A DNA stretch of 64,000 nt, from positions 32,550,001-32,614,000 of the forward strand of contig NC_087254.1 of the NCBI RefSeq assembly GCF_037042905.1. Reading direction: 5' to 3'. The first letter of the stretch is position 1. Each line of letters starts with the position of its first letter. The stretch is from Lytechinus pictus (Eukaryota). The notes below the pieces were generated by a model, which made no database searches, was not told where the DNA came from, and saw only the letters and a program-made list of their open reading frames with translations. Positions 15,066 through 47,949 of this stretch are shown one piece after another. Position numbers and translations under genes: made by a program.

Positions 15066-16208
15066 TTAGTATGTGCAGTCGTTTCCGTGGTAGACTCGCT
15101 GTCGCTGTGTCGTTGGAGTCGTGAAGCGAGTAATGAGAAGATACTCGGTGACCTCGGCATCGTATTTAAGGTCAAAGGTCTCGGGGTCACGGGCAAGGAC
15201 GGAGAGCGACTGGCCTTTGTCGTCGGTGATGACCGAATACTCGTACTGGTTGTTGACGATTGGGCCGAGTTTGAGTATCCAATCTGATGAAAAAAAGAAA
15301 AAATAAATAATACTCTAATTGAGTAGTTTTACAATGCCCCAAAGAATTTATCTTTAAAAAATCCAACAAACAAACAGAAAAGTTTCTGTAGCTTGGTCTT
15401 AAGAAAACCTGTAAACTTACATTGTGTAAAATAACAGAAAATTGGTTTATGGCATATGACACATTACAGATTTCTAGTAATAAAACTTCTCTTTCCTCTT
15501 TTCACAAATAGACTGATTAAATTACAGAAAATTTGCCGTTATAATAATTTACAGAATGATTCTTTAAGTTTTGTTTTCTGTGAAATCTCCCTTTTGTATA
15601 GTGTAGGTCTATTACAGATGGAAGTAAATCAACATTTGAGTAAGACCATTTGCTTTAGAGTGTACTTACATTTACTTTCAGTGGCTTGGTTATCAAGGTT
15701 GACAATAATCTTTCCAGGTTCACTCGGGAGAGGAACCCTGGCATTCCCGGTTGTAGTAACAAGTTCACCCTCTACTGTGTAAGTGTTTACAACAGCGAAG
15801 CTGGTTTCAGAGAGCTTCGAATCTGAAGAATAAATACATAAGATAAAGGTTGATGAGATTAACATTAAAGACAATCATAGGTCTTATCATCATCAGCAAC
15901 AACACCATCATCATCATCATCATCACCACCACAATCGTCATCATCACAACATCATCATCATCATCATTATCGTCATCATCATGATCATCATCATCATGAC
16001 CGTCATCATTATCATCATCATCAGCAGCAGCATTTTCAGCATCAACAACATCGTCATCATCATGATCAACATTATCATCTTCATCATCATCAAAATCATT
16101 ATCATCCTCATCATCATCACCATCACCGTAATCATCATCACTGTCGTCGTCGTATTCAACTTCATCATCACCACCACCACCATCGCCACCAACACCACCA
16201 CCAACACC

Positions 16209-16255
<47 letters not shown>

Positions 16256-19200
16256 TTTATCACCACCACTACTGCTACACCATCATCGGCAACACAACCT
16301 CCACATTACCAAAATAGTCATCACTTAGGCCGACATCATGGCGCATTTCGTCAACATTTTGTCGTCTGATAAGCTGATAGGTCGGCTTACTATACGCCAT
16401 AGGCGGTACCTTGCCATTCGTTCTGATAGGCTGAGAATTACTTGTCTCTGACTGTTACTGTATAGTAAATGTTTTAAACCCCTCAAAAAAAAGTTTGGAA
16501 ATCTGTGTTTGGCCATTAATTTCTCCCAACTCCCAATGTTACACAATGCATGTTTTGCGCCACTCAAAAGATAATTTGATTCTCTTTAAAATGTTACCAT
16601 GCTTGTAATGATCATGCCATCAAGAAAAGAGCAGGATTCAAAAGTGTTGGATGAGGTCTGAATTGAAAAGCTACAAAACGAACAGAATTAGTCATGATGG
16701 GTCAATACAGAACATGATTCTTTTGTCTGTGTCAATAGAGATGAAAATCCATTCAAATCAAGCCCCTGCTTCTGTAGTGATGGTACTGTGAGATAACATG
16801 GTTTGAGTCGTGGTTTGAAATACCCATGCATGTTTTTTGTTTGTTATGTTTTTGCTTGTGCAGAGGTCTGTTTGATTCCATGTTAATGGTGATGTTAAGG
16901 TGCATGAAAACATTTAAAAGAAACTGCTGAGAAACTCAGTGACTTTCAATATTGTGTCATTTTGCAAATTTTGAATTTTGACCTTGCCCCACATTTCAAG
17001 GCACTGCACCTCCATGTGAACCATAATCATATCATGTAGGGTATCATTTAAAGAAAATTAAATGATCAATTCATTGGTATCAATTATACATTAATATTTA
17101 CTCAAACCGATGAGGAATTATCGATCAAAGTAAAATAAAATGCTGAGAAACTCACTCATCACCACGGAAAAAAACCCAGTAATTTTCAATATTGTCATTT
17201 TGCAACTTTTGAATTTTGACCTTGCCCCACATTTCAAGACACTGCACCTCCATGTGAACCATAATCATATCATGTAGGGTATCATTTTAAAGAAAATTAA
17301 ATGCTCTATTCATTGCTATTAATTACACATTGATATTTACTAAAACCGAGGAGGGATTATCGGTCAAAGTCAGATTTCCAAACTTTTTTTGAGGAGTTTA
17401 GAATGACAACTATTCCAACACCATCCTCACCACCATTATTACCACCAACACCATTTTCATTGTAATTATCGTCATCAAAACGATCTATATACTAACACTG
17501 AGCCGTTGTACATTCTGCATCTTCTGTTCCAAGGAATGAATCTGACCAGTAATTTGTGTACATCTATACGTGATAAATTGATACAAAAGTAGACAAGAAA
17601 GCAAGCATTCAAACGAAAAATCACCCCATCTCAATGCTGAGCTGTAAGCTTGAGACCAATTCCACTCTAGCAACCCATGGTGATGTGATTATATGAAAAA
17701 GAATAGTAAAGTTGTTTTTTTTCTCTGTGAGGCGATATCAAAATTCTTCTGTATTTTCCATGTTAACTAAAATAATCTTATAATATTGAATATAACACGC
17801 GATTCGGGAAATTTGGGAAATTGTGCGGCAGGCGAGTAAAAGGAAAAGTAAATCGACGTTTTTAACTAAAACGATTCTTTAATTCCACATTCTCAAAATC
17901 AGTTGTGCAAAATCGACAGATGCCTAATGGTTGCATTAGATGTGATCATTCCAAATTGCAACTGCTAATCAACTAGTTTTAGAGTGGATGATGTGGTTTC
18001 TAATTCTATTTCAATTGTACTCACTCATTTGATTTAATTGTACATACTTTCCTTAAAAATAGGGCACAAGACCCCTCTAGTCATGATAGTCGGATCGAGC
18101 CGGGTTAGATACAATACCGTTTTACGTGGGGCATATTGTTTGTGCTAGATCTGCCACCGTCCCTACCCACCCCACCAAAAAAAAAGGACGTTGAAAAATA
18201 AAAATAACAATTCTATAAATTCTCATATTCCAGCTTCAAAGGGTAATCCTTTATGGTACACCCAAATTTTGCACCATCTTTATTGATTACATGTTAAAAA
18301 TATCCATACATGCATTAAAATAAATCTAAAACTCTTTTAACTCCTTCTGACAGATTTTACGAACTATATCCTTGTATGCGTTTGCTCGTACCAAAGTACA
18401 ATTGTTTTTTTTTAATCAAACAATAATATCAAGAGGATTCTGATATCAGAAGACAGAAGATCATAATGTATGTTGACCTCTCCATTTAGATATTGATAAG
18501 GATATTCAATAATCAAAAGATATTGAAAAATGAAGTTATATTATAACAGTCCAACCCGGTAGTGTATGTAATGAACTTTCTTTGTCGTTGCGACGTTTTG
18601 TTCGGAATCATCTGGACAAGTGTGGCCGTAATTTGGTTTGAAAAACAATATTCTTGACATGTTGATGAAATGTACCTGATGAAAATATCTTAAATCATAT
18701 AAAGTCAGTAACAGCTCACTTTACTTATAAAATAACTTTTGTAACATGTAATTCATTTTGTAAATGGGATAATTACTGGCAATTGAGAGTACATAGCCCA
18801 CTATACTTATCTATCAAACATTATGATAATTAAGTATGTTTTTCAATGCAATGAAAATATTTAGGTTATTTAAAGAAAAATCTATTGCAATTTTGAATAA
18901 TTTTGTTTGTGATATAGATGAGGTCCGTTGATGAAATAGAGTTGTTTATTCTGGGAGGTCGTATTAATTATTAGAAACACCATTTTTTTAAACATGTTTT
19001 CTGAATGTAATATCCGTTTCAAATCAGCCTAATTGATTAAAATAATTGTGAGTATGTGAAATAATTGTGAGTATGTGAAATTTGTGTGTGTGTGTGTGTA
19101 TTAATATCTTGTATTATTTTACTCCCGACATTATAATATAGGCCTACTAATTCGGCTTTACTACTAGTAAGTCTTTATCATAACGAAACAGCATACTCAA

Positions 19201-19786
19201 TCTCCGCCCATTTGAATTGTATTAATCATAATTTGGCATGGTTTGCTATAGTTTCACACTGTTAATTTTTTAAGCCCCTCACTCAACAAGCAAAAAACAA
19301 GTTGTTTAACTTTTAACAAATTGTTTAAACTTTTTGAAAATGGTTTAAAACATTTTGAATGCAAACTTTCATGAAACTGTAAATAAACTGTTTAAATCTT
19401 TAAGCAACTTGTTTATAACTTTAAACAATTGTTTAAAACTTCAAGCAACAATAGTTGTTTGATTGGCGGGTATAAACGACATGATTTTTAATCGGAGTTT
19501 TACATTGCATATACTTTCCACATAGCGAACTCTTCCATTTTAATTGAATTAAAGATGTGCATATTTTGCCATAATTACGTATGCTTTATGTGTGCTTTCA
19601 TCTTATTTTGACTAAAATCAGGAAACACATAGTTTTCAACGACCAACTTACGTTATACCAGGTTCCGACGTATTTGTTCATGTCGATATCATACACCGTC
19701 CCGAGGCAGTCAGCGGGGGACGAAAAGAACAACATGGCGCCCAAAACTCCAAACCACAGCATAGCGTTCTTATTACCCATTTTCAT
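15066..19786 (-). CDS. Secreted lipocalin, ApoD-like (copy A), 190 aa
   Basis: Exons 19652-19786, 17497-17563, 15670-15822, 15066-15283 (phases 0/1/1, 573 nt). Signal peptide, then KYVGTWYN (GxW motif), AECTTAQY, EPGKI, YWILKLGP, YEYSVITD (TD motif), VLARDP (R motif), YHGNDCTY*. Confidence 0.9.
15886..16325. repeat. (CAT/CAC)n microsatellite in intron 2 of lipocalin A
   Basis: Visible trinucleotide run; it produces the poly-M and poly-I ORFs. Confidence 0.95.
16475..17400. mobile_element. Non-autonomous Tc1/mariner-like element with an internal ~240-bp tandem duplication
   Basis: TIR TAAACCCCTCAAAAAAAAGTTTGGAAATCTG / CAGATTTCCAAACTTTTTTTGAGGAGTTTA; internal direct repeat ~16925-17130 vs ~17140-17370. 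Confidence 0.7.
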
Positions 19787-20804: not shown

Positions 20805-20925
20805 TTTCTCAGTGGTCTAGTGGACATGTCTCCGGATTATAGATCACAAGGTTCGGGGTTCGATTCTCGCCTCGGCACTAATATCCTTTGGAAAAGGCGT
20901 TGAGGTGAGGTAAATGAGGTAAAAA
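20805..20925 (+). mobile_element. Truncated tRNA-derived SINE
   Basis: GTGGTCTAGTGG A box, GGTTCGATTC B box, then a remnant of the GGTGAGGTAAATG core. Confidence 0.55.
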
Positions 20926-22992: not shown

Positions 22993-25900
22993 TTATGCTC
23001 TTGGTGAGAAATAAGTGCAGTCATCTCCGTGGTAAACGCGCACTGGTTGCGTTGTTGGGCTCGTGAAACCCGTCACAAGAAGGTATTCCCTGACCTCTGC
23101 GTCATACTTGATGTCAAAGGTCGCGGGGTCACGGACGAGGACGAAGAGAGCCGCAGCAGCAGGATCCGTTACGATGGAGTACTCGTACTGGTCGTTGACT
23201 ATCGGACCAAGTTTGATGATAAAATCTGGATTGAAATGATAATATNNNNNNNNNNNNNNNNNNNNNNNNNNNNNNNNNNNNNNNNNNNNNNNNNNNNNNN
23301 NNNNNNNNNNNNNNNNNNNNNNNNNNNNNNNNNNNNNNNNNNNNNNNNNNNNNNNNNNNNNNNNNNNNNNNNNNNNNNNNNNNNNNNNNNNNNNNNNNNN
23401 NNNNNNNNNNNNNACTTTTATGAATTTTGGCTAGTAAATTGATCGCAACAAAATCCAGAAGAGACGTTTGAAGACAACTCTTGATTCCATAGCATACTAA
23501 AAAAAAACATGACTCTACAAGCCTATTTGAAACAATTTAATTCAAATGACGCCCATTTAGGGCGTATGCCATATGCCCTTACACTGTTTTTCAACGAAAA
23601 AAGAGACATTCTGTATCTTGAATTATTTTGGAAAAAAAAGAACTTGAAATTGAATTAAAATCGCATTTCAGTCATTTCAGGCAGTACGTTTGTATAACCA
23701 CTTTGAGAAAACACCACATCCCCATTGTTTTTGGACATGAAAAGGAAAAAAAACTTACATGGCGTTGCCAGGGGTACTCCTTCTAGTCGGACAAGAAGCC
23801 TTCCTGGTTCGAGACTTGGGAAAGGGATGTAGGCATACCCCTCAATGGTGTCAGATCGACCCCCTCGAACACTGTAGGCATTGAATACAGTCACGTTGGT
23901 CTCAGTTATCTTCTGATCTGAAAAAAATAAAGATAAAGAATATAGTTAATAGATTGATTGATGGTGGAATAAAGGGAGAAGGATGGAAGACATGGGTGAA
24001 TGATAGATGGATGGAAGGAAAGATGGAAGGAAATACGACAATACACCAGACGGTGGACTGTACTGTTTCCAGAAGAAGAAGAAGAAGAAAGAAATAAGAT
24101 AAAATATATTAAAAAAAATACCCAGGGTAGCCACTTCAGTTAGAAAACTGCTCTACCAGCGGCACTGCATAACATAGATATGTTATAATTATACCTTTCT
24201 CCAATCTAAATGCTGAGCGCCTATATGACAGAAGGTCCTATTTTATTAAGTCTTTGGTTTGAGCCGGCCGGGGATCGAACCCACGACCTCCCGTTCATGA
24301 GGCGGGCGAAAGATGGAAGGAAGTAATGAAATAAGGTAAGATTGGAGGAAAGAAGAATTGAAACAATTAAGAAATGAAGGAAGTAAGAAAGGAAAGAAGC
24401 AGAGAAAGAATTAAGAAATGAAGAAGTGAAGGAAAAAGGGAGGAAGGAAGGATGACTAGAAATAATAGCTGACTGGATAAAGGAAACCAAAACCCAAGAA
24501 GAAAGGCAATCTTATTGGAAAGGGTAAAATGAGAGGAGCAATGTATAATAAGTTTCATCAAAATCGGTTATGAAATAGGCAAGTTATGGACGTTTAAAAA
24601 AAATATTGTTGTACTTTCTATGGGGATCCTCAAATTGGCAAACACGCTTCAAAATGGCTGATTTTATGGACAACCCTCCATTTGTTTGTACACAAATTTT
24701 CAGATTTCCCCCTTTTTTGCATTATTTCACATCATCTCCACCTGACTTTGACATATGTGGTGTGGATTATATTTTCCCCATGACATATGTTATGCTCAGA
24801 ATGGGGCAATATGCAATTTACAGGACAATAGGGAAAATCTGAAAAATTGTTTTCAAAACAAATGGAGAGTTGTCCACAAAATCAGCCATTTTGAAGCATG
24901 TTTGCCAATTTGAGGATCCCATAGAAAGTACAACAAGACGTTTTAAACGTCCATAACTTGCTTATTTCACAACCAATTTTGATGAAACCTGTTTTAAATT
25001 GTTCCTCTCATTTTACCATTTCCAATAAAATTGCTTCTTTTTGGGGGTTTTTGGTTTTCTTTAGAAAAGGGTATATGGATAGGCGATATTCATAGATCAA
25101 TTAAACCTTGAACAAGATCAAGTTCGATTTGTTGACGTGTGATATCTTCACCGAAGTAAAAATATAGAAATTATTATGAACTGATAGATTGATGGACACA
25201 ATAATAAATCAATAAATGGATAGATTGATGAATAAGGAAAGACGACAAAATTTGAACGAAAAAAAGAAAGAATGCTCAAACGTATCGACTGTGCTTGAAA
25301 CGTTGAACACCGTACTGGTATAATTGATGAAATCATCTTGCCATATAATATCAATGGATTATTGCTGGATAGATGAGGAAAGGAAGGAGGGAATCGATAA
25401 ACAAATGGATTGATTAATTTAGGGATCATGGAATTATTTAATGGAGATTTAGACACACTAACCACCGCGTTCATGTGTCGGCGGGGTGTTTTCGGATAAC
25501 TTAGTGAAAAATGAATGAATATATTTAAGCCGACTGAAAAATGAAAGATGAATTTAAACAGATTGAATAATTTCATTATTTATGATTATTTATTTAGAAA
25601 GTTTATGTAAACAAAAAAGCAAGTTCGGAATTTTGAAAAAATGTGATATTCAAAAAATTATTGCATTATTGAAGTGAATTGATTTTTTTGTTTTTTTTGT
25701 TTATATATGTACATGTTATTGTGAGTAAATACCTCGATTAAGAGGATAAAAGAAAAAAATATTTAGGCTGACTGAAAAATGAAAGATGAATTTAAACAGA
25801 TTGAATAATTTTATTCCGAAGATAAAAAAAAACATGTTTCAAATACAAGACTTGGCAAAATCATAAGCAAAATCATTTTGTGAGTGGTTGATGTACTAAA

Positions 25901-27008
25901 TAAGTTGTAATAAGAATTTGCATATTTGTAATACGATATCTTTTAAATATCTATACAAGATTATCATTTTATTTTGTTTCATTTATAGTACTTACACTCA
26001 GCCGTAGTGCACTCTGCGCCATTCGTGCCAGCGAATAGGTCTGCCCAGAAATTTGTATACATCTGTATAAATAGTGATGGTGAAACATATAATTCAGTAG
26101 AAACAGAAAACACGATGACAGACATGATAAAATAAAACAATAACATAAGTTATATCTAAATATTGCAGATATTGAATTGAAAGCTTTTATTGATATTGCA
26201 CTTTGCAGCAAAAAGCTTGATTGTTTATAATTTATTCCATTCATAGTGTACAACTGGTTAAAAACATCAAACATGAAAATAATAATATTGCAACTCAATA
26301 TAGAGAGTGGATATGCTCACTAAAAGGAAAAGCTAACGTAAAAAGTAAAAACAGAAAAGGGTTGGTGGTGGTAGGATGCATTTTCTTTGAAGCATCTTAA
26401 TTTAAAAAAAAGAGTGAAAAAATTTAAAAAGGTGACAAAATGCAGGATGGATTCTGGGGACGAGCGAGCAGTCATGTTCAATTCACAAATTGTAAATAAA
26501 TGTGAATTTAATATGATTAATGTGTATTAGTGTGGCTATTTAGGCCACTTTGATTTGGAAAGAGGTAACTCAAATTGGACCAGCCAGCATGCAAGGCCTA
26601 TTTGGAATGATTGAACTTAAGACATACACAGAGGCAATAGAACAACTGATCTCAAGTAACTTGGTTGTGGATCCTTAAAAGGCAGGAATGTATTATTTCC
26701 TTTAACATTTTTAGACGCCATCCGATATCAAGTAAAAAAAAAAAAAAAGTGGATGCTCAGTGTAGCCAAGGTATTAAAAATTCAATTTTCTCAGGTTTTC
26801 TACGATGATAGCTTTGTATATTTTCAACATATTATCAGACATTTTATCATTAAAAATAAATATTTCAACTTACGTTATACCACGTTCCGACATATTTGTT
26901 AACGTCGATATCATACACCGTTCCAAGACCTTCGGCGGGTGACGAAATAGACAAAATGGCGCCGAAAATTGCGACCAGCGCAAACCAACAGTACGTGTTC
27001 GTAGCCAT
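22993..27008 (-). CDS. Secreted lipocalin, ApoD-like (copy B), 197 aa
   Basis: Exons 26874-27008, 25996-26062, 23759-23917, 22993-23225 (594 nt); the N gap falls inside intron 3. MATNTYCWFALVAIFGAILSISSPAEG-LGTVYDIDVNKYVGTWYN...ECTTAEY...IEGYAY...EPGRL...KLGPIVNDQYEYSIVTD...LFVLVRDP...DDCTYFSPRA*. Confidence 0.9.
24115..24310 (-). mobile_element. tRNA-derived SINE (5'-truncated)
   Basis: GGAGGTCGTGGGTTCGATCCCCGGCCGG B box followed by an ACCAAAGACT core. Confidence 0.6.
24478..25063. mobile_element. ~580-bp almost fully palindromic MITE in intron 2 of lipocalin B
   Basis: Long inverted arms, e.g. TTGTTGTACTTTCTATGGGGATCCTCAAATTGGCAAAC vs GTTTGCCAATTTGAGGATCCCATAGAAAGTACAACAA. Confidence 0.8.
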
Positions 27009-28876
27009 TTATATTCTTTAATTTTGTTCTACGGAAGGAAAGTCGAAGTTTGCAGTAGAAAGATGGTGCAGGGACTTGCTTGTTGCTTGAATCTATAATA
27101 TCATGAAATCGAAGACAAGATGTATTCAACTAGTTGATAGCGATTGATGCAATGTTGGTCACACCCAAATGATATCGGTCTTCGTCAACAAATGAGCACG
27201 GATAATAGTGGTCCAGAAGTTTATCCTAATTTAAGATAAGACTATTGATATTCATAGATAAACGGATTGTGGTACTTAAAGTATTCTATTCTATTTTTCT
27301 TTCCAGCTTTGTTATTTCGTTTTCTTCCCTTGCTCTTCAGGTTTTTTTTAGCCCCTGTATTTCATTTCCTATTTTGGAAGAAATTATCGTCACCATCACC
27401 GTGAATTTGTCCGTTGTAGTTATAGTCACTACCATCGTCATCATCATCATCAATGTTATTATCACCATCAATAACACCACCACAAATATCATATCATACC
27501 ACTACTCNNNNNNNNNNNNNNNNNNNNNNNNNNNNNNNNNNNNNNNNNNNNNNNNNNNNNNNNNNNNNNNNNNNNNNNNNNNNNNNNNNNNNNNNNNNNN
27601 NNNNNNNNNNNNNNNNNNNNNNNNNNNNNNNNNNNNNNNNNNNNNNNNNNNNNNNNNNNNNNNNNNNNNNNNNNNNNNNNNNNNNNNNNNNNNNNNNNNN
27701 NNNNNNNNNNNNNNNNNNNNNNNNNNNNNNNNNNNNNNNNNNNNNNNNNNNNNNNNNNNNNNNNNNNNNNNNNNNNNNNNNNNNNNNNNNNNNNNNNNNN
27801 NNNNNNNNNNNNNNNNNNNNNNNNNNNNNNNNNNACAGGAGATTACAATGAAATTGAAGAATAACTTGACAGGATAGCCCATGAAAGCCGAAAGGCTTAT
27901 TTCCAATGGGGTCCTATAGTTAGTATAGCAAATAGTATAAACTATGACAATATTGCCATCACCACCATTATATTGTTTTTAACTACTATAAGCCTACACA
28001 TTCTCTTTAAGTTCTCGTGTCTTGCACCTTCACAACGGATTAGTAAAGATTACAATACCGAGACATCGATATCTTCCTTTTAAACCCTGGTTAATGATCT
28101 ACTATAGTCCACGTGCCATTGACATACTTTGGTTATTTTGATGACAACTAAAATTGCATTTTATCATCGAAATTCGGACAATTATCGTTGGAATATTTTG
28201 GATGGAAAAGGATCACAATTGTACTTCTTCTTGTAAAAATATCCAGCGAGATATTGGTAATTCAAGACATCCCCAAATCGAAAATCGTGTGTTTAGACAT
28301 TAAGGATCTGAAAAAAAAGGTGTTGCCAAAACCTGCATATGGTTTTTCATATTCTTTTCATGTCGTTATGTTTTGACATTATACAAATAAACCCTGGAGT
28401 AAGGATATGTAATACCATGTCAGATGAAGTTGAAATGGTTCTTGGTAACATACATTTTTAAAATAGTGTTAGAGATCATACTGAAACTGCCATTTTCGCC
28501 TTAGATTCGTCATAAAAGATAAAATCTAGTCTCATATGGTTGTGTGATAAAAAAAAAAGCTGCATGAACAAATTCAGAGGAAATTTCCCTGTCACACCTA
28601 GCTTTCAAGTTTCAAATTCCACATACAAATCAATCCATCTCTTTCAATTAAATAAATTAATTGAACATGTATACATTAGTATCAGTGGATATCATTGTTG
28701 CATGGTCCTAGGAAAATGTTAAGCCACGGTCACAAAGATTCGAACGAACGATGCGTTCATACGAATCTTAATGTTCATAAGAACTTGAGTTCCTAGAGAT
28801 TCTTAGATGGAGCATATATCTTACGGCCTTCTTAAGAACGACTTAAGAACTTCTTGAGAAACGAAATGGTTTTACG

Positions 28877-30890: not shown

Positions 30891-30937
30891 CTTTAATATA
30901 ATTATTTATACATTAATTGTTGGAGTTATTGGGACTT

Positions 30938-33025: not shown

Positions 33026-33120
33026 GATGATAGCGAGGATTTTTCCCGTGAATGACGACGAGGAGGAGAAGATGGATATATCGGTGATACAGTTCTTCTA
33101 GTTTCCAGGTGGTAAACTGC

Positions 33121-33158
33121 TACTGATGATCATCATGTCATTGTGGCTCGTATTTATA
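33121..33158 (-). promoter_or_regulatory. TATA box plus Inr of lipocalin C
   Basis: Minus-strand TATAAATA (33151-33158), a TCAGT initiator-like motif ~30 bp downstream (33122-33126), and the ATG ~100 bp further on. Confidence 0.6.
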
Positions 33159-33490
33159 GAAAATTTATGCCATTTTCATCTGCTATGTTGCAGATAAGTA
33201 AATTGCGTAAGCTCACAGATGCGGTTAGTTGGGTTCGTTGTGTAAGAAGATAATCCTTTTCAAAATCATATTAGAATAAATATTTGTGTTCCAAGGTGGA
33301 AGAATCACTATTTATGTAAATCATGTGGACGAAAATGTCATGAGGAATGACACGTGATAATGATGATGCAATTTATTGGTTATTCATTTTTTCATAAAAA
33401 AATATCATTATCTCGTTTGATATCGTAAGGGGTGATGGTTATTTCAAAGGTGCAAATTTCCCTTTTATATAATTAAGAACCCGCATCTTG

Positions 33491-33563
33491 TAATACTTCG
33501 AATACAATTATATTGAGTTTTCTATAATATAGAAAACTCAATATAATTTTATTCGAAGTATTA
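33491..33563. repeat. 73-bp near-perfect AT-rich palindrome
   Basis: 36-bp arms (33491-33526 and 33528-33563) with one mismatch and a 1-nt spacer. Confidence 0.9.
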
Positions 33564-34940: not shown

Positions 34941-34948
34941 TATAAAAG
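34941..34948 (+). promoter_or_regulatory. TATA box of lipocalin D
   Basis: TATAAAAG about 120 bp upstream of the ATG at 35065. Confidence 0.55.
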
Positions 34949-35064
34949 ATGAAATGTTCTAAATCCCTTCTTAGATTTTTGAAACTCCTGATTAGGCGAA
35001 GATCAGCCAATATTCTTTCTAATTCACTAAATATTGAAGAAACAATCGGCGAAATTACATCATA

Positions 35065-37269
35065 ATGTCAAAGATGTTGATGATTGCTCTGTGTTTTGCC
35101 GCATGTCTACTCGGCGGTAATGCCATACACACTGTCCCACAACTTCAGGCAGAGGCGTACATTGGCAGATGGTATCAGGTAATTTATTTAATGATTCCCC
35201 TCTCTTAATATCAAGGTACGAAAATCAGCATCCAACATTACCATTTTAATCTATGATCTTCATGACTTGTCAAACTTTTTACTTCCCAATAAGATCATGG
35301 TATATACTTCGGAGTGAGTGATACCATGACTGATGAGCAACATCTGACTATGTATAAGGAGGAGGGGGTGGTCTTAATGATTAAAATTATACTTAATACG
35401 ATTATTTTAACACCGATCCGTTGTTGCCCAATGTAAAACTGTCGTTTGCAAATACCCTTTCTTGTGTCGAGGATCATACTGCCAAGATGATTTTGAACAG
35501 AGACACATATTTGCGAACGACCTACTAACATGATTTATCTAAAATGATTTGATTTGACATATTATTCAGGTGTACCATTACATTAACTAAAATGAAATAA
35601 AAGAAATATATTGCTTTCATACTCATGATGATATATATTTTTAATTTCAGGTGTATACTAACTTTTGGGCTGATCTCTTCTCGAACATTTTCGAACCAGA
35701 CTGCGTAACAGCTGACTGTAAGTTTGGCTACCACTAATTATTCAGTAAATTTAGATGGTTATATTTTTTTCACCGGTTATGCCTTACACCATTTTTTTAT
35801 CAGCCTTCACATTTCGATCATCTTTTCGTTCAATTTGAAATCGAAAAAACCCCTCTATTCTTAGACACACATTATTTATAGATCAAACGAGTACGTATAC
35901 ACACGGCTCTCGATCCGAACAATAATTGTCTACAATATCTGAAGTTTCTATGTAAAGAATAGTTAATTTTCATCAAAAGTGGCCTTTCAGATATGCAGGA
36001 TTTATATTGATTCATTAATCTCTTATACCTTTTTTTTTTAATTCAGACGCTCTTTTGAACAGTACCTACGTGTCTGTGTATAACGCCAATTGGCGTTTTG
36101 ATGAAAACCGTACCGATGATATCAGTGGCTATGCATACATCGTCGATGTCAATGATCCCGGTAAACTCAAGGTCGTACTCGATGGCGTTCCCGTAGAAGG
36201 AGATTGTAAGTAGACACGTCATTCTGTCAAAATAATATAATTCTGTTTTGGTCTGTTGTTTAAAACACATTCCAATTGCTTCCCCACAGATTAAATCTCC
36301 CAAGTGACTCTGAAGAATGACACTGTTTTAGCCTCTAAGCATGCACTCTTATTCCGGTTTTGTTCATCGTATCATTGTTACCAGATCTTCAAGTCCACCC
36401 CAAAAAATTTGATCTGAATCAATAGAGAAAATTCAAACAATCATAACTATAAACAAATTCATGAAATCGGACGTAATATATAAAGAAAATTATGACTGTT
36501 TAAAGTTTAGCTTATTTTTTTCACAAAAAAGTTATATGCACAACTCTATAGTGTGCAAATGAGATCGTCGATGTCACTCACTCACTATTTTTTATTTTTT
36601 TAGATTTAACAGTATTCCAATTTTGTACATATTTGACAATAGGGGCCCTCTTCTGATTGAGCAAAAAAATGATCAGAAATGAATAAAACTTTGTTTCACA
36701 TAACTATGAGGAAAAAATCTGAATATTTCCTATTTCATATAATGATAATAGCCTAATAGGCATGTTGAGTGTGTATTGTCATCGGTCCACTCATTTGTAT
36801 CCTGACCAGGATCTGCTTTTATATCTTTCTTATTTTACAACTGATTTGATGAAATTATCAGTTTATGCTTGTTTGATTTTTCTCTTTTTATTCATATTAA
36901 CTTTTTTTTTGGGGGGGGGGGAGGGATCGGTTGGATTTGACATTATCTATCAGCGCATCTCTTTTGTTACCTTTCGTAAATCAAATATAAGATGCAGGAT
37001 ATTCATTCATTCTTTTTGTTATTTCGAAAACTACAGATTGGATTTTCAAGCTCGGTCCGATCATCGAGGGTCAATACCAATACAGCCTGATCACCGACGG
37101 GGAAGCTGCCCGACAGTTATTCGTCCTCGCCCGTGATCCTGCAGAGTTTGCTGAGCTGTATGACAAGGAGGTGATGGAGTATCTACCACTTCAGGGGTTC
37201 ACAGGGCCACGCAAGGAACCTTACGCCATCACGCACAATGATGACTGCGTATACCCACCAAGAAACTAA
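35065..37269 (+). CDS. Secreted lipocalin, ApoD-like (copy D), 190 aa
   Basis: Exons 35065-35178, 35651-35717, 36047-36205, 37037-37269 (573 nt). MSKMLMIALCFAACLLGGNA-IHTVPQLQAEAYIGRWYQVYTN...DCVTADY...PGKLKV...YWIFKLGP...YQYSLITD...LFVLARDP...DDCVYPPRN*. Confidence 0.92.
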
Positions 37270-37304
37270 GACGGTTTCTGCACAAATATGAGCGTCATCA
37301 TTGC

Positions 37305-39221: not shown

Positions 39222-42191
39222 ATGGCATCTCGTGTCCAAGTATTAATTTCGGTTTTCGTCCTGTCATTTTTTGCGGTTGAGTGCATGCATACAGTGCCTG
39301 AACTTATTCCAGAAGCTTACGCGGGGAGATGGTATCAGGTAGGTACTCTGTGATATTGAATAAATTTAAACTGCTTGTTTATTCATTTATTTGTGAATAT
39401 TTATAGTGTGACCTGATTAGCATAATAAACAAACATCCAAGCATGATAGACATGATCAGTTTCCGTAGTAACTAGTATAATGACATTGCCACTTCTACTG
39501 AAGATTTTATTTTAGGAAGAGAGACAATATATACGAGAAAGAGATTAATTACCAAGATGGGCAAATGTAGAATAGAATAAGACAGAATCTGTCAATTAGA
39601 TAATTTTATCTACAATAACATTCTGTAAACCTTTATCGAAACTCAGGGGCGGATCTAACTTTTTTTCAAGGGCGGGGTATTGACCAAAAGGACCATCATC
39701 CGCGAGCCGTGACGCGGCGAGCCGATTTTGTTGTTGTTGTTGCTTTTTTGAATCCCCTTAAGAGCAGTGGAGACCATAAAAGGCAGTTCATGCTGCAGAA
39801 ATATATTGTGTGGATCTGGACATAATGATGGCGATTTTTAATGCACATTGTTGTTATTTTATTACTTGGCAGCCCAAGGGGGGGGGGGGTTACCCCTACC
39901 CCCGTAGATCCGCGACTGAAATTATTCATTAATCCCTAAGAGTGATGACGGTGACGATGAGATATAGCTGGCCACTACCTCGACCAAAATATCGACACTG
40001 ATGAATATTTGGTCAGGGATTTCACTGGTTGTTCGGCTCATATAGAGGCCTTTATAATTTATACATATCTTTCTTCTAAAGTCAAATAAGAAAAATAATA
40101 CAAACAAAACACAAAAAATTTCATTAAAATCGGTTACGACTTTTTCATTTTTTCCATTACTTCCTCAGAATCCTATGCATGCCTTCATAAATATGCAGTG
40201 AGCAATCTGATGACGTCTTATTCCCACTTTGGAGAAAAGATTGGATTGACTCATTACATAATGTATAAAATAATTACTGCTGACACTTAGTTTTTACGAG
40301 GAAGGTATACCCACATGTATGAAAATATAAGATAATTATGATTTCAGATAGTAATACAAGAAAATTAACATACATCATCAGCCCTCCTATTGCATATTCA
40401 TGAAGGCGTGAATAGTGAATGTTTTACAAAAAAAATATTGCTTTACTTGAAATTATTTTTTTTTTTAAGATTAGATTTAGATGAAATGTTAAACCATCTG
40501 CTCGGTGAAGTTTAATATATTTCTTTAAATGTAATCATTTTAGTAGAATATATACTTTATGGAATAATTTCTGCGCTCTATAAATTTATATATTATTATT
40601 ATTATATATTATTACCTTTATGCTGAGTAACCCCTTTAACATGGTTGCCTTTTATTCTATCTGCAGGCTTACAGTAACCGATGGGCTGATCTTGGTATCC
40701 AAGTCATCGAACCAGACTGTGTGTCGGTCGATTGTAAGATTCTCAATATTTATATATATATTTTGTTTAAATTTGAGGGATGTCTCTAAGTATAACTACT
40801 AATTGCGATATTATTATGTACATCCCCTATCATGGTGATTACAATGACGCCGACATTGATGACGAACACGATTGCGAAAAATAAGGAACAATGAGAAATA
40901 TGACAGAAATGAAGAGGAAAGGATTTCTATGACAATGACAATGGTTTCCATAACAAAAGTTATTCAATGAAATTTGATAATTATTCATTATTTGTCTGTA
41001 CACAACTATTTCAACAAGTTCACAATGATGCTTTTAATTGATGAATATGAACAAAATCAAAATAAAACTACGAATATATTGGGTAATTGTTCCTCTCTTT
41101 TGTGCCTCTCATTTTTCTTCTTTACTTATCTATTTATGTCTTTCCTCCTGCTTCCCCCTTCTTTCTCTCTCTTTTCTTCCCCATCCTATTTCTTCTTCTT
41201 CTTCTTCTTCTCCTCCTTCTTCTTCTTCTTCCTCTTCTTCTTCTTCTTTTTTCTTCTTCTTCTTTTTTTTCTTCTCCTTTCTCTCGTTCTTTATCTCCCT
41301 TTTCCCCCTTCCCCATCATAGATGGGGTCATAAATGCAACATTCGTGTCCGTCTATAACGCCAACTGGCTTTTTGACGAGAAGCGTACAGACGACATCAA
41401 CGGCTACGCCTACATCCCAGACCTCAATAAACCAGGCCAGCTCAACGTCGTGCTCGAAGGAGTTCCCGTCCTTTTAGATTGTAAGTCCCCATTACTCACT
41501 GTGATTATAATATATATATATATATCCATCCATTCATCCATTTCTTTCACAAAATATTTAAATAAAAGAGTTGCCAAAGCTGTTGTACATGTATAATTTC
41601 ACACATATATATATATATATATATATAAAAGAACATATTATGTTCATATTCATAATCTTGATCAGATTTTTCCTCGTAGTTCTTTTTTTTTTAATAGCAA
41701 AATCAAATGGACAGGTACCTGAGTTAGTCGCATTTTCTAATTCCTTTTTCTCCATTTATTTTCGTCATTATTTACTTGAAATTTCGAACATTATTAATAG
41801 ATAGTAATATAACATTATTTTGATAATACTTTTTGCTTGCTTAACATTACATCAAGACTATTTATTGCATTTTAATGGTTCAATTATTCAAAAGAATGAT
41901 ATCGACATTATTGCTTGATTTGCGATGTTCTCTCTTTCTATTCCAACAGACTGGATCTTCAAGCTAGGGCCAATCATCAATGGCCAATACCAATACTCCC
42001 TGATCACTGACGCCGAAGATTCGGCCCGACCCCTCTTCGTGCTCACCCGTGACCTGGACGTGTTCGCTGAGCTCTACGATCAGGAGGTTCGCGAGTATCT
42101 AACCCTGCACGACTACGTGGATGGTTTCAAGGCCCCGTATGCCACTTTTTACAACGAAAGCTGCGTTTTCCCGCCATTAAATCGAAATTGA
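39222..42191 (+). CDS. Secreted lipocalin, ApoD-like (copy E), 194 aa
   Basis: Exons 39222-39338, 40667-40733, 41322-41480, 41950-42191 (585 nt). MASRVQVLISVFVLSFFAVEC-MHTVPELIPEAYAGRWYQ...DCVSVDY...INGYAY...YWIFKLGP...YQYSLITD...LFVLTRD...ESCVFPPLNRN*. Confidence 0.92.
41150..41310. repeat. (CTT)n / pyrimidine tract before exon 3 of lipocalin E
   Basis: Visible microsatellite; it produces the poly-F/L/S/R ORFs. Confidence 0.9.
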
Positions 42192-44938: not shown

Positions 44939-47900
44939 ATGGCGTCGTTTGATAAAATTCTATTCTTGATTTTAACCATCTTTGGCATCACTTCCCATGG
45001 AATGCACACTGTGCCCGAACTAAACCCGGAGTCGTACGTTGGAAGGTGGTATCAAGTAAGTGAACATCGATTTGTTTTTCTATACCTTCTCAAAGAGGGA
45101 ACTTCGACAACTTTAGAATATTAAAATTACAGGGGGCATTGATGGAGCAAAGAAATGAATCATGCTCTGAAAGAAGTACGTTATGGGGTGACTTGAATAC
45201 ACTCTTTAAACGGATTGGGAAAATTAACAAATCTGTTGGCAAATATGTGTCCTATATACCAATAAAACTCGTCAGTATCAGCCAAAATTCTGGTAGATTC
45301 TTATCAATAAATTGGATAATGTCGACCATTTTCGTTGATCGGATAAATATTCACAAAAACGTTGGTATTTTGAACAACCCTTTTTAAAAGTGTAGGCATA
45401 AAACATTATATATTATAGTAACCAATCACTGAATTCTTCACCCAAGGAGGTTTCGTAGTAGGCCTACTTGGCTTGGAACTTATATAACGCCCTCAGTGTC
45501 AAGACATGGGGGGGGGGGGGGGTCGCACCGCTATGCAGAACGCTTTCAAGAGCATAGAAAATATATTGTCAAATGCCCTTCATGACAATGAACAATCATA
45601 AAGTATTTGTCGATAACTGGTGAATCTAAACGGCAGTTTCGTCCTGGACTCTGGACAAACGAAATATTTGCAATTTTTCGGCAGCTCTAAAACTTCAGAC
45701 GAAACTGCTGTTTCGGTTCACCAATTGTTTACTTAGACCTCCCAGCTGTTCATTGTTATTTTACGGGCATTTTCAATAGATTTACTGTGTTGTTGAATCC
45801 GTCCACGATGCAGTTACGAAAACATCTTATTACGTTTGAAAATAAAGTTACACTATACAGTCACACCAACGATACACAGCAAAAACTGTGGTGTTAACCG
45901 GCGTACATACATGACCACACCGGTGTTAAATTGACAGTGTTAGTTTAACACCTGTAGGTGTTATTACAACACCTTTGGTTGTTACATTTACACTCTTTGT
46001 TGCTATGTTCAATCTCTAGGGTATAATTTTAACACCTCATGGTATAATCCTCTGTTAACACCAATTGGTGTCAGTTTTAGCACCAAACCTTTTACAGTGT
46101 ACCGACTCAAAACTGACCGATTGTATGTTACTTGAAAAAAAAAGGTGTAATAGCTTTGTCGGTCTGTATGTAGTCGGTATAAACAGTGTGATTGTATCCT
46201 TATAGGCCTACTAATAATGTAGTTGCAGTCAAAAGTGATTGTGATTAATTAGTTTAACCTCTCAAATTTCAAGTCACTGATTTTCTCACCTTGGCAACTT
46301 TGATTGCTAAAGTCACAATCGTTTGTGTTGGGTATAGCTTTACATTTCTTTCTCTGCTTCCCTCTTTTTTTTTACATGACCACTCGAAAATGTAAGGGAC
46401 ACGTCCCTGAAGCTTTGTAAGAATTAGTTAATTAGCAAAGCATCTTACTTGTTCGGTGACAAGAAACATATTTTTTTTTTGTGGTTTTAATAGTAACTGT
46501 GGCTAAGGCATATAAAAAATCGGCACTATTAAGCAAATATCCCCATTTTTTCTTTCAAAGGTTTACACAAATGCTGTATCTGACTTTTTCACCGGTGTTC
46601 AAGAACCAGACTGCGGAACTGCAGATTGTAAGTTGATCTACTTCGCCGTTTTCTTCTTCAATCGCTATTTTTTCGATCTTCTATTGTCATTGTTTAGAGG
46701 TGTTGTGGCTCAGTGGATAAGTCTCTGGACTGTGAACCACAAGGTCCGGGGTTCAAATCCCACCGCAGCACTAGCGTCCTATGGCAAGGCGTTTATCTAC
46801 ATTTGCCACTCTCGACCCAGGTGTAGTAAATGGGTACCCGGTAAAAAGAAATTCCTTGAATGCTCGATGCGCCCGATCAGGGTAGCCGTGCTAAAGCCGG
46901 GGTAATGGTATGCAGCGATTAGAATCATTTGTATTAAGCGCTATATAAATGTTGCATATTATTATTACTATTATTATTGTTATTATCTACCAAAGCAGAA
47001 ACTGTAAATCTTAATCGATCATTATGAAGATTTTCTCTGTAAGGCGTATATTGCCAGAGCAACAAGACAATATAATGGAATGTTAAGAGATTAAATTTAA
47101 TGGTCTTTTTGTTGCATGTCTGCCTTTCTTTTATCTCTCATTTTTATACTGCATCTTTACAGACACCTTAATCAATTCGACATACGTCACAGTTTACAAC
47201 GCTAATTATCGTCTTGACGAGGAGTTTACGGACGGACTGGGTGGCTACGCCTACGTCCCAGACCCATCCATTCCAGGAGAGTTAAAAGTCGTACTTGATG
47301 GCGTACCAGTAGCTGGAGATTGTGAGTTTGAAATTTCACCAATATTGTCAAAATTAACCTTGATATCATTACAGACAATTTTGATAATAATTATAGTGAA
47401 CACAAATATCATAGTACTAACAACCATCATTTAATTCATTCCCATTAATAGATGGACAAATCCCAAATTTTTAATCCTAAAAAGAGCATCAATCTCGTCG
47501 ACCCAGCGCCTCCGTCTTTTTGAACCCATTAAATTTTTATTTAAGCAACAATTAAGATATTGGACAGGTTCAATAAATATGTTTTCAAGGAGCGCAATGT
47601 CTGATATTTGGCAAATGCGTCCACAGTAATAACACATCAAGCGAATAAAAATGCAAGGCGACGGAAGTCATACATGTAACCACCACTTCTACTCTTTATT
47701 TCTTTTTCAGACTGGGTCTTCAAATTAGGGCCGCTGATCGAGGGTAAATACCAATATAGTCTAGTCACGGACGGACAGGACGCGCGTCAACTTTACGTTC
47801 TATCACGTGATCCCGAGGAATTCTACGAGCTTTACGATCACGAGGTCTCAGAATACGTGGCGCTGAATGGGTTCACGGGACCGGTCAAGACACCTTATGA

Positions 47901-47949
47901 AGTACCACATCCTCCAGAGTGTCGCTATCCTCCCAGCCCACCGGAATAG
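44939..47949 (+). CDS. Secreted lipocalin, ApoD-like (copy F), 193 aa
   Basis: Exons 44939-45055, 46561-46627, 47163-47321, 47711-47949 (582 nt). MASFDKILFLILTIFGITSHG-MHTVPELNPESYVGRWYQ...DCGTADY...LGGYAY...PGELKV...YWVFKLGP...YQYSLVTD...LYVLSRDP...ECRYPPSPPE*. Confidence 0.92.
45522..45823 (+). mobile_element. Hairpin MITE copy 2 (intron 1 of lipocalin F)
   Basis: GAACGCTTTCAAGA...GTCAAATGCCCTTCATGACAA...GTCCTGGACTCTG...ACGGGCATTTT, matching copy 1. Confidence 0.75.
45875..46099. mobile_element. Tc1/mariner-type MITE
   Basis: TA|CACAGCAAAAACT ... TTTTACAGTG|TA with many GGTGTT/AACACC motifs; related to 50426-50667. Confidence 0.65.
46697..46985 (+). mobile_element. Full-length tRNA-derived SINE
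   Basis: GTGGCTCAGTGG A box, GGTTCAAATCCC B box, CCCAGGTGTAGTAAATGGGTACC core and a (TAT)n tail. Confidence 0.85.

What the first reader, a model, noticed from the sequence alone, without database searches (positions are those of the whole stretch)
15066..47949. Six-gene secreted lipocalin array missed by the ORF track: candidate diversified hydrophobic-ligand-binding system
Seen: six intact genes (190-197 aa), each with a signal peptide, the three kernel lipocalin motifs (GxWY, TD, L.R), an invariant 67-nt exon 2 and intron phases 0/1/1. The scaffold is conserved, but the exon-2 segment differs in every copy: YWSDSFLGTEDAE, FWADLFAGTNGAE, YWADLFSNVFNPD, FWADLFSNIFEPD, RWADLGIQVIEPD, AVSDFFTGVQEPD. 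Established: in lipocalins the segment after GxW forms the L1 lid loop over the calyx, and invertebrate lipocalin expansions carry pigments (crustacyanin, insect bilin-binding proteins), lipids or signals. Inference: this is a panel of carriers for different pigments, lipids, chemical cues or defence compounds.
Basis: partly seen in the sequence, partly recalled or inferred. Interest (0 to 1): 0.78.

Follow-up and report, generated by a model that had tools for sequence, protein, structure and literature searches.

The report
Sea urchin secreted lipocalin gene array
Six neighbouring four-exon genes of the sea urchin Lytechinus pictus encode small secreted carrier proteins of the ApoD/Blc lipocalin type; they are real and at least two are transcribed, but they are already annotated, old, mostly conserved duplicates and not a specially diversified binding panel.

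Summary
The six genes exist as described: 190-197 aa, four exons, all GT/AG, exon 2 always 67 nt, intron phases 0/1/1. Both assembly gaps lie outside coding sequence. One is in intron 3 of gene 2, 20 nt from the acceptor; the other is 499 nt upstream of gene 2's ATG. The window is Lytechinus pictus. Four models are identical to RefSeq 'uncharacterized protein' entries and two nearly so, so the genes are not new. Five of six pass Pfam Lipocalin_2 and g5 misses by 0.5 bit. AlphaFold models of g4 and g5 are confident lipocalin barrels closest to Blc, TIL and ApoD. Assembled contigs from two studies join g4 and g5 exons exactly at the predicted junctions. The array really has eight members (two lie beyond the window), is shared with S. 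purpuratus, and most duplications predate the Diadema split. The 'diversified lid' claim fails. The exon-2 segment ranks in the 12th percentile of variability, is a conserved clade signature, and has dN/dS of 0-0.07 in g2 and g3 (0.11 gene-wide). Only g1 and g5 evolve fast. Ligands are unknown. A different lipocalin cluster of this genome was judged ordinary earlier in this scan.

The parts
15066..19786 (-). g1 (RefSeq LOC129270101), 190 aa; exons 19652-19786, 17497-17563, 15670-15822, 15066-15283. Fast-evolving subfamily-A copy.
   Evidence: Model. The near-identical RefSeq cluster representative P0284 scores 43.2 bits on Lipocalin_2. dN/dS is 0.37 against S. purpuratus P0282. It has lost the GYA motif, the N-glycosylation sequon and five C-terminal residues.
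22993..27008 (-). g2 (LOC129270102), 197 aa; exons 26874-27008, 25996-26062, 23759-23917, 22993-23225. Intron 3 contains the first assembly gap.
   Evidence: Identical to P0281. Lipocalin_2 41.9 bits. 86% identical to S. purpuratus LOC589771, dN/dS 0.107.
23246..23413 (.). Assembly gap (168 N) inside g2 intron 3, 20 nt upstream of the exon-4 acceptor.
   Evidence: The coding sequence is unaffected. Continuity across the gap was not verifiable and the gap was not filled.
27508..27834 (.). Assembly gap (327 N) in the g2-g3 intergenic region, 499 nt upstream of the g2 start codon. It may cover part of the g2 promoter or 5' UTR.
30938..33025 (-). g3 (LOC129270103), 190 aa; exons 32912-33025, 32137-32203, 31645-31803, 30938-31170.
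   Evidence: Identical to P0176. Lipocalin_2 39.9 bits. dN/dS 0.107 against the S. purpuratus ortholog, with zero nonsynonymous changes in the L1 segment.
33026..35064 (.). Head-to-head intergenic region between g3 and g4 (2.0 kb), a candidate shared promoter. The same arrangement occurs in S. purpuratus (1.8 kb).
   Evidence: Three blocks of 107-293 nt are 65-70% identical to the S. purpuratus intergenic region. A regulatory role is inference only.
35065..37269 (+). g4 (LOC129270104), 190 aa; exons 35065-35178, 35651-35717, 36047-36205, 37037-37269. Transcript contigs reach from 35004 to about 38034.
   Evidence: Identical to P0158. Lipocalin_2 42.8 bits. AF2 pLDDT 94.5 and Foldseek best matches Blc/TIL/ApoD. 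All three junctions are seen in contigs of runs X1 and X5.
39222..42191 (+). g5 (LOC129270105), 194 aa; exons 39222-39338, 40667-40733, 41322-41480, 41950-42191. The most divergent copy.
   Evidence: One residue differs from P0177. Lipocalin_2 23.5 bits, just under the 24-bit cutoff. Tree branch length 0.66. AF2 pLDDT 92.6 with the same barrel. The exon 1-exon 2 junction is seen in X1 and X5.
44939..47949 (+). g6 (LOC129270107), 193 aa; exons 44939-45055, 46561-46627, 47163-47321, 47711-47949.
   Evidence: Identical to P0161. Lipocalin_2 40.3 bits. Diadema ortholog P0163.

Best explanation
This is an ancient tandem array of single-domain lipocalin genes of Lytechinus pictus (Pfam Lipocalin_2, the ApoD/Lazarillo-Blc-TIL branch). 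Six copies are in the window and two more basal copies lie just outside it.

Shown: each gene has four coding exons. At least g4 and g5 are transcribed and spliced as modelled. The proteins are about 19-20 kDa and acidic (pI 4.2-4.5). They are predicted to fold into an eight-stranded beta-barrel with a C-terminal helix. They carry one conserved cysteine pair and, except for g1, one conserved N-glycosylation sequon.

Inferred from the family: a signal peptide sends them into the secretory pathway, and outside the cell they hold a small hydrophobic ligand (a lipid, or a heme- or bilin-like molecule) in the barrel cavity.

Shown for evolution: the six belong to an echinoderm-specific clade with two subfamilies, A (g1, g2) and B (g3-g6). 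The clade is marked by a remodelled L1 loop, with ...YTN[FY]W[AST][DN]LF...P[DE]C in place of the widespread TFERNA-C. Most duplications predate the split from Diadema. The order and the head-to-head g3/g4 pair are shared with S. purpuratus. g2 and g3 are under strong purifying selection, while g1 and g5 evolve several-fold faster.

The copies are best read as long-established paralogs with separate roles, not as a recently or continuously diversifying panel. What those roles and ligands are is unknown.
For: Gene models and splice sites. Identity or near-identity to RefSeq LOC129270101-105 and 107 on a contig of the same length as the window's contig. Pfam Lipocalin_2 at 39.9-43.2 bits for five copies. 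Closest solved structures by sequence are TIL-1 (7e-8), Blc and ApoD. AF2 g4 pLDDT 94.5 and g5 92.6. Foldseek finds only lipocalins at the top, with Blc at TM 0.86 normalised to the target. Spliced contigs in two studies match g4 junctions 35178|35651, 35717|36047 and 36205|37037 and g5 junction 39338|40667. The family is confined to one eight-member cluster in the 812-Mb assembly. Tree with starred supports for the clade, the subfamilies and the ortholog pairs. S. purpuratus synteny. dN/dS 0.107 for both g2 and g3, with L1 segment values 0.07 and 0. Protein features.
Against: No ligand, tissue or stage information exists. Two deep RNA-seq runs (about 6% of each read) had no reads on g4 or g5 exons, so expression is restricted in a way I cannot name. 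Splicing of g1, g2, g3 and g6 was not tested with reads here and rests on the RefSeq models. Runs X1 and X5 are not on record as RNA; the intron-less contigs are the argument that they are. Signal peptides rest on a hydrophobicity heuristic. g5 falls 0.5 bit under the Pfam cutoff. The high AF2 confidence is driven by the alignment and does not prove that g1 or g5 are functional. dN/dS used simple pairwise Nei-Gojobori counts at dS of 0.5-0.7, and the 13-codon segment gives very small counts.
Confidence: 0.85

Rival explanations
1. One reading: a panel of carriers whose L1 lid loop has been actively diversified, by positive or diversifying selection, so that each copy binds a different pigment, lipid, cue or defence compound.
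For: The segment does map to L1 at the open end of the barrel. Open-end loops are somewhat less conserved than closed-end loops and strands, 0.47 against 0.57 and 0.59. g1 shows 7 nonsynonymous against 2 synonymous changes in L1 relative to its ortholog, about 0.9. g5 and g6 have the most deviant L1 sequences. The g4:g5 contig depth ratio differs between X1 (190:95) and X5 (23:78), a weak hint of separate regulation.
Against: L1 ranks only in the 12th percentile of variability and is not the most variable element. L1 is a conserved clade signature across echinoderm classes. L1 dN/dS is 0.07 in g2 and 0 in g3. Paralog synonymous divergence is saturated and most orthologs exist in Diadema, so the differences are old and fixed, not ongoing. 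The g1 signal rests on 9 substitutions and fits relaxed constraint equally well.
Confidence: 0.1
2. Part of the array is decaying. g1 and/or g5 are under relaxed constraint and heading towards pseudogenes, leaving about four functional lipocalins.
For: g1 has dN/dS 0.37 against 0.107 for g2 and g3. Its tree branch is 0.40 against 0.06 for its S. purpuratus ortholog. It has lost the near-invariant GYA motif, the sequon and five C-terminal residues. g5 has a branch of 0.66 and scores below the Pfam cutoff.
Against: Both reading frames and all splice sites are intact. g1's dN/dS is still well below 1. g5 is transcribed and correctly spliced at a depth comparable to g4. g5 keeps W, the Cys pair and R, and is predicted to form the full barrel.
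Confidence: 0.2
3. The proteins do not work mainly as soluble ligand shuttles. Instead they act like ApoD, TIL and Blc in membrane or lipid protection against oxidative or temperature stress, or as extracellular-matrix components.
For: The nearest characterised relatives by sequence and fold are TIL-1, Blc and ApoD. From established knowledge of those families (ApoD review PMC8530192), they are linked to membrane maintenance and antioxidant roles. An earlier scan note (s1-320053) says another L. pictus lipocalin group occurs in the larval skeleton matrix.
Against: There is no lipobox, no GPI-like tail and no hydrophobic C-terminus that would tether the proteins to a membrane. No matrix-proteome paper naming this family was found. 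The six have lost the TFERN-type L1 motif shared by TIL, Blc and ApoD-like relatives.
Confidence: 0.2

Closest known systems
Apolipoprotein D / Lazarillo / NLaz (metazoan ApoD-type lipocalins)
   Same: Secreted single-domain lipocalins of about 170 mature residues with four coding exons (PMC8530192). They share the GxWY start of strand A, a Cys in the L1/strand-B region paired with a C-terminal Cys, and an N-glycosylation sequon near strand B. Source annotations call the relatives 'apolipoprotein D-like' or 'Lazarillo protein'. ApoD 2HZQ is a structural match.
   Different: By sequence ApoD matches only residues 29-114, at E 1.5e-3. These proteins have one conserved disulfide pair where ApoD has two. 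They lack the GPI-type hydrophobic tail of Lazarillo. LGP replaces TDY in the F-G loop. The six form an echinoderm-specific clade separate from the more ApoD/TIL-like g7 and g8. Orthology to chordate ApoD was not tested.
Bacterial Blc and plant temperature-induced lipocalin TIL (Pfam PF08212 Lipocalin_2)
   Same: These are the best sequence and fold matches: TIL-1 8WB2 at 7e-8, and Blc 3MBT at TM 0.86 normalised to the target. The Pfam family is the same and is passed by five of the six copies.
   Different: Blc is a lipoprotein anchored to the outer membrane, and TIL has no signal peptide (own knowledge). These proteins have a eukaryotic signal-peptide-like N-terminus. L1 is three residues longer, and there is a four-residue insertion in the F-G loop relative to TIL and Blc. 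The TFERN motif is replaced.
Pigment-binding invertebrate lipocalins (bilin-binding protein, insecticyanin, crustacyanin) and sandercyanin
   Same: Lipocalin fold. BBP 1BBP and sandercyanin appear among the structural matches.
   Different: They are only distant matches (17-21% identity), and there is no evidence of pigment binding here. The one sea-urchin carotenoid binder found in the literature is an FABP-like protein, not a lipocalin (PMC4156332).
Tandem lipocalin arrays of vertebrates (MUP and odorant-binding clusters)
   Same: Several secreted lipocalin genes in a local array produced by tandem duplication (own knowledge; review PMC8476925 was listed but not read).
   Different: From own knowledge, those arrays are young, lineage-specific and rapidly turning over. 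This array is old: orthologs exist in Diadema and S. purpuratus, paralog synonymous divergence is saturated, and the two best-measured copies have dN/dS of 0.11.

Membership tests
Pfam PF08212 Lipocalin_2 | Whole-protein score at or above the curated gathering cutoff (24 bits) | tested here: met
   g1 representative 43.2, g2 41.9, g3 39.9, g4 42.8, g6 40.3 bits. The g5 representative scores 23.5 bits, 0.5 below the cutoff. Single exons and six-frame genome scans do not reach the cutoff.
Lipocalin fold (calycin superfamily) | Eight-stranded antiparallel beta-barrel with an N-terminal 3-10 helix and a C-terminal alpha-helix | tested here: met
   AF2 models of g4 (pLDDT 94.5) and g5 (92.6) show eight strands followed by a helix. 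The top 50 Foldseek PDB matches are all lipocalins. These are predictions, not solved structures.
Kernel lipocalins | SCR1: G-x-W at the start of strand A | tested here: met
   GxWY is invariant in all six. The W is invariant in 76 homologs.
Kernel lipocalins | SCR2: T-D-Y in the strand F / loop L6 / strand G region | tested here: not met
The F-G loop reads K-L-G-P, with G120 invariant in 76/76. It aligns to TIL 'IDP' and to ApoD 'ATDY'.
Kernel lipocalins | SCR3: conserved Arg at the end of strand H | tested here: met
   R146 (g4 numbering) is present in 75 of 76 homologs and in all six copies.
Secreted lipocalins | Cleavable N-terminal signal peptide | tested here: inconclusive
   A hydrophobic h-region is present in all eight genes. 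No dedicated predictor was available, and my crude cleavage-site guesses are unreliable.
Lazarillo (name given to the Holothuria homolog) | GPI-anchor signal: a hydrophobic C-terminal tail | tested here: not met
   The last 20 residues have mean Kyte-Doolittle values of -0.6 to -1.6 in all six.
Apolipoprotein D orthologs | Phylogenetic grouping with chordate ApoD; two disulfides; four coding exons | tested here: inconclusive
   Four coding exons are met (PMC8530192). Only one conserved Cys pair is present. No chordate sequence was included in the tree, and the six sit in an echinoderm-only clade.
Ligand-binding carrier | Demonstrated binding of a small hydrophobic molecule in the calyx | not testable with these tools
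   No model coordinates or docking were available, and no literature data were found.

The most novel reading that the evidence does not exclude
The echinoderm-specific clade evolved to carry an echinoderm-specific class of small molecules, for example naphthoquinone pigments, sterol or saponin derivatives, or waterborne cues. The clade is marked by a remodelled L1 (W-x-D-L-F...P-D-C replacing TFERN) and by loss of the SCR2 aspartate. Under this reading the long-retained paralogs g1-g6 have distinct ligand specificities, and g1 and g5 are undergoing lineage-specific adaptive change in Lytechinus.
Probability: 0.15. Interest if true: 0.5.

Novelty: new member of a known kind. Interest (0 to 1): 0.22.

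Why it matters
The practical value is modest. The report gives exact, cross-validated models for an eight-gene lipocalin cluster in a sea urchin that is being developed as a genetic model. It shows that the cluster is an old, echinoderm-wide invention with a distinctive L1 signature, and it singles out two fast-evolving copies (g1, g5) worth a proper selection test. No publication in the searched library deals with this subfamily, so its ligands and its roles in echinoderm physiology are open. In kind, however, it is an ordinary family of secreted carrier proteins. The genes are already in RefSeq, and the feature that made the finding look special, a hyper-diversified lid, does not hold up.

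Tried and rejected
1. Exon-by-exon Pfam scans gave only sub-threshold PF24976 hits.

2. Six-frame scans of the assembly with PF08212, PF24976 and PF00061 did not hit this cluster, because the exons are too short. They hit other loci on contigs C14 and C15 instead. The PF24976 scan rang nowhere, not even in the control genomes, so it says nothing.

3. Raw RNA-seq runs X8 and X9 gave no exon coverage, only partial matches on repeats. This is not evidence that the genes are silent.

4. Literature searches for sea-urchin or echinoderm lipocalins, LOC589771, Lazarillo in S. purpuratus, coelomic-fluid lipocalins and skeletal-matrix proteomes found nothing specific to this family. The only hit was a passing mention of an 'Apolipoprotein D' transcript higher in female Paracentrotus gonad, which cannot be assigned to this subfamily.

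5. The 7TM receptor gene that sits between the g2 and g1 orthologs in S. purpuratus has no homolog in this window.

6. No tRNA genes or Rfam families were found in the window.

7. Pairwise dN/dS between paralogs cannot be interpreted, because synonymous divergence is saturated.

8. My rule-of-thumb signal-peptide cleavage sites are inconsistent between copies and should not be used.

9. Pocket-residue comparison was not possible because model coordinates are not exposed to scripts.

10. I considered that the two-domain top hits (330-460 aa) might mean that adjacent genes here are read as one protein. I rejected this because every gene has its own start codon, signal-like N-terminus and stop codon, and the RefSeq models and the g4 contig are single-domain.
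Full report
**1. What is in the sequence**

The window has 35% G+C and two runs of N, at 23246-23413 and 27508-27834. Three are on the minus strand (17513-17551, 26012-26050, 32153-32191) and three on the plus strand (35663-35701, 40679-40717, 46573-46611).

I anchored on these segments and on the GxWY-bearing first exons and the LGP...TD...R last exons visible in the ORF list. From there I built explicit spliced models. Each gene has four coding exons:
- Exon 1 is 114-135 nt and ends after GxWY[QN] in phase 0.
- Exon 2 is exactly 67 nt in all six and ends in phase 1.
- Exon 3 is 159 nt (153 nt in g1) and ends in phase 1.
- Exon 4 is 218-242 nt.

All 18 introns are GT..AG, and 13 of the 18 donors read GTAAGT. 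The products are 190, 197, 190, 190, 194 and 193 aa.

The gap at 23246-23413 lies in intron 3 of g2. Twenty bases of intron, ending in a CAG acceptor, separate it from exon 4. The gap at 27508-27834 lies 499 nt upstream of the g2 start codon, in the g2-g3 intergenic region.

The g2 coding sequence is complete. It is identical to a RefSeq protein (P0281). It is also colinear over its whole length with the S. purpuratus ortholog, at 86% identity and with the same exon structure.

Whether the DNA is continuous across either gap cannot be known from this assembly.

**3. Whose genes they are**

The window is contig C10:32,550,001-32,614,000 of an 812-Mb assembly. A profile of the six exon-4 peptides (A1) finds 707 cluster representatives at E <= 1e-3. 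Using full-length relatives as queries retrieved Lytechinus pictus RefSeq proteins that lie on a contig of 37,180,102 bp, the same length as C10.

- g2, g3, g4 and g6 are identical to LOC129270102, -103, -104 and -107.
- g5 differs at one signal-peptide residue from the cluster representative named LOC129270105.
- g1 differs at a few residues plus a two-residue N-terminal indel from the representative named LOC129270101. These differences could be allelic or due to cluster representation.

So the genome is L. pictus, and all six genes are already annotated as 'uncharacterized protein' with a Lipocalin_2 domain. 'Missed by the ORF track' only reflects short eukaryotic exons.

**4. Family membership**

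Single exons reach only sub-threshold scores, and on a different model (PF24976). Full-length proteins score 39.9-43.2 bits on PF08212 Lipocalin_2 (cutoff 24) for g1, g2, g3, g4 and g6, and 23.5 bits for g5.

By sequence, the closest solved structures are Arabidopsis TIL-1 (8WB2, 7e-8), E. coli Blc and human ApoD.

AlphaFold2 with a 76-sequence alignment gives g4 a mean pLDDT of 94.5 and pTM of 0.87. The model has a 3-10 helix, eight strands and a C-terminal helix. Foldseek against the PDB returns only lipocalins at the top: Blc and its derivatives, TIL, ApoD, sandercyanin and bilin-binding protein. The most divergent copy, g5, gives the same architecture at pLDDT 92.6. That confidence is largely driven by the alignment.

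All copies share these features:
- a hydrophobic N-terminal stretch;
- no hydrophobic C-terminal tail, so they are not GPI-anchored like Lazarillo;
- pI of 4.2-4.5;
- one conserved Cys pair (C56 and C184 in g4);
- except for g1, an NxS/T sequon at the start of exon 3.

The HMMER alignments to TIL and Blc, the ApoD sequence printed in PMC8530192 and the model's strand map place the canonical SCR2 'TDY' position in the F-G loop. That position reads K-L-G-P here, and its Gly is invariant in 76 of 76 homologs.

**5. Transcription**

Only one read-laying run of 6 kb was allowed. I used window 35000-40999, which covers all of g4 and exons 1-2 of g5.

Logan contigs of runs X1 and X5, from two different studies, contain a 552-nt piece. 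It joins g4 exons 1-2-3-4 exactly at 35178|35651, 35717|36047 and 36205|37037. Another piece joins g5 exon 1 to exon 2 at 39338|40667. All of these are GT..AG.

The contig depths were 190 and 23 for g4 and 95 and 78 for g5. These are a poor measure of expression, but the ratio differs between the two runs. Further contigs extend the g4 transcript from 35004 to about 38034.

Two deep RNA-seq runs of the same species, X8 and X9 (about 6% of each read), had no reads on any exon. Spliced transcripts therefore exist, and expression depends on the sample. The tissues and stages are coded and unknown to me. Neither X1 nor X5 is on record as RNA; the intron-less contigs themselves are the evidence.

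**6. Extent and age of the array**

The exon-4 profile finds eight matches in the whole assembly. All are on C10 within 71 kb: the six in the window, plus two at +14.6 and +21.4 kb beyond its right end.

I fetched and modelled those two. g7 is the RefSeq 'apolipoprotein D-like' protein P0128 (77.8 bits on Lipocalin_2). g8 is a further copy. Both have a 64-nt exon 2 and the widespread L1 motif TFERN.

A maximum-likelihood tree of 31 sequences gives these results:
- The six window genes sit in an echinoderm-only clade (support 100/99).
- The clade splits into subfamily A (g1, g2, two S. purpuratus proteins, one Diadema, one Amphiura and one Patiria protein) and subfamily B (g3-g6, three Diadema proteins, and asteroid and holothurian clades).
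- g3, g4 and g6 each pair with a Diadema ortholog (starred supports), so these duplications predate that split. From my own knowledge, that split is an old one within crown echinoids.
- g1 and g2 duplicated after the Diadema split but before the Lytechinus/Strongylocentrotus split.
- g5 is a long-branch (0.66) relative of g4.

In S. purpuratus the gene order is g4-ortholog(-), g3-ortholog(+), g2-ortholog(+), a 7TM receptor gene, g1-ortholog(+). The head-to-head g3/g4 pair and the gene order are therefore conserved. The receptor gene has no counterpart in this window.

**7. Is the exon-2 segment a diversified lid?**

Position: yes. The segment (g4 residues 43-55) forms a short helix plus a loop between strands A and B. 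That is loop L1 at the open end of the barrel.

Diversification: no, for four reasons.

(a) The paralogs are only 31-65% identical overall, so any 13-residue stretch 'differs in every copy'. The segment's mean pairwise identity is 0.40, against a mean of 0.52 (sd 0.10) for all 13-column windows. That is the 12th percentile. The C-terminal tail (0.30-0.38) and the exon-3 C-D loop are lower.

(b) Across 20 echinoderm sequences the segment is a recognisable conserved motif...YTN[FY]W[AST][DN]LF...P[DE]C. It replaces the TFERNA-C of g7, g8 and relatives in molluscs, annelids, a nemertean and other echinoderm paralogs. It is a signature of the clade, not a hypervariable patch.

(c) Against S. purpuratus orthologs, by Nei-Gojobori counting, g2 and g3 both have dN/dS of 0.107 (dS 0.74 and 0.59). 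Within the 13 codons the values are 0.07 and 0.

(d) As a group, open-end loops are modestly less conserved than closed-end loops and strands: 0.47 against 0.57 and 0.59 among the six copies, and 0.45 against 0.60 and 0.63 in the 20-sequence clade. This is the usual lipocalin pattern and is not specific to L1.

The exceptions are g1 and g5. g1 has dN/dS of 0.37 overall and about 0.9 in L1 (7 nonsynonymous against 2 synonymous changes). It has also lost the near-invariant GYA motif, the sequon and five C-terminal residues. g5 has the long branch and the sub-threshold Pfam score. Either relaxed constraint or lineage-specific adaptation would explain both, and the data here cannot separate the two.

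**8. Most likely function**

Shown: intact genes, of which g4 and g5 are seen as spliced transcripts; lipocalin family and predicted fold; secretory-type N-termini; an old, conserved array.

Inferred from the family (the ApoD review PMC8530192, and the ligands in the PDB titles: vaccenic acid in Blc, heme in TIL, progesterone in ApoD, biliverdin in sandercyanin and BBP): extracellular binding of a small hydrophobic molecule in the calyx. The long-retained paralogs probably differ in ligand, in place of expression, or in both.

Nothing in the sequence identifies the ligand. No paper in the searched library treats this subfamily.

**9. Novelty and verdict**

This is a new, uncharacterised member set of a very well-known protein family. 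It is already present in public annotation, and its organisation (four exons, tandem array) is ordinary for lipocalins.

Three points are mildly interesting: the echinoderm-specific L1 signature together with the lost SCR2 aspartate, the conservation of the array across echinoids, and the two fast-evolving copies. The feature that motivated the high first-stage score does not survive testing.

Noticed in passing
G000:C10:32620001-32640000 (L001, L002), 14.6 and 21.4 kb beyond the window's right end: Two further members of the same cluster on the plus strand. g7 is the RefSeq 'apolipoprotein D-like' protein P0128 (203 aa). g8 is 204 aa. Both have a 64-nt exon 2 and the canonical TFERN L1 motif, and both sit at the base of the echinoderm-specific clade.
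   Followed up: partly
G000:C14:24557656-24570730 and G000:C15:13462272-13490825: Other lipocalin loci in the same genome. C14 has Lipocalin_2 and Lipocalin hits. C15 has a tandem run of four PF00061 hits on the minus strand, possibly the four-gene cluster of earlier scan note s1-320053.
   Followed up: no
window:51514-54198: A 2.7-kb element bounded by 439-nt inverted repeats that are 97% complementary (arms 51514-51952 and 53760-54198), with many shorter internal inverted repeats. It looks like a foldback or TIR-type transposable element. Each arm carries a 99-aa ORF.
   Followed up: partly
L003:19810-23542 and L004:1-5569 (S. purpuratus): In S. purpuratus a 411-aa 7tm_1 receptor gene lies between the orthologs of g2 and g1. 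The 3.2-kb g1-g2 spacer of L. pictus has no such gene, and tblastn finds no homolog anywhere in the window.
   Followed up: partly
window:33026-35064 compared with L003:1458-3298: The head-to-head g3/g4 intergenic region shares three blocks of 107-293 nt at 65-70% identity with the corresponding S. purpuratus region. These are possible conserved regulatory sequence.
   Followed up: no
Protein hits P0001, P0003-P0006, P0008 and others; P0183, P0185, P0186, P0192 and others: Many of the best database matches to the exon-4 profile are unnamed proteins of 330-870 aa with two or three lipocalin domains, on short contigs of 1.3-1.9 kb from metagenome and Logan assemblies. Separately, about 306-326-aa proteins combine Lipocalin_2 with C-type lysozyme domains (PF00062, PF18896). 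The source organisms are unknown.
   Followed up: no
window:15944-16330 (g1 intron 2) and 41087-41330 (g5 intron 2): Long low-complexity tracts (ATG/ATC-rich and CTT/TTC-rich microsatellite-like runs) inside introns produce spurious long ORFs of poly-M, poly-I, poly-F or poly-L.
   Followed up: no
window:36800-36999 and 37200-37599: Very high contig depth (thousands) and many partly matching RNA reads with loose ends in g4 intron 3 and in the g4 3' region. This indicates dispersed repeats that are transcribed elsewhere in the genome.
   Followed up: no
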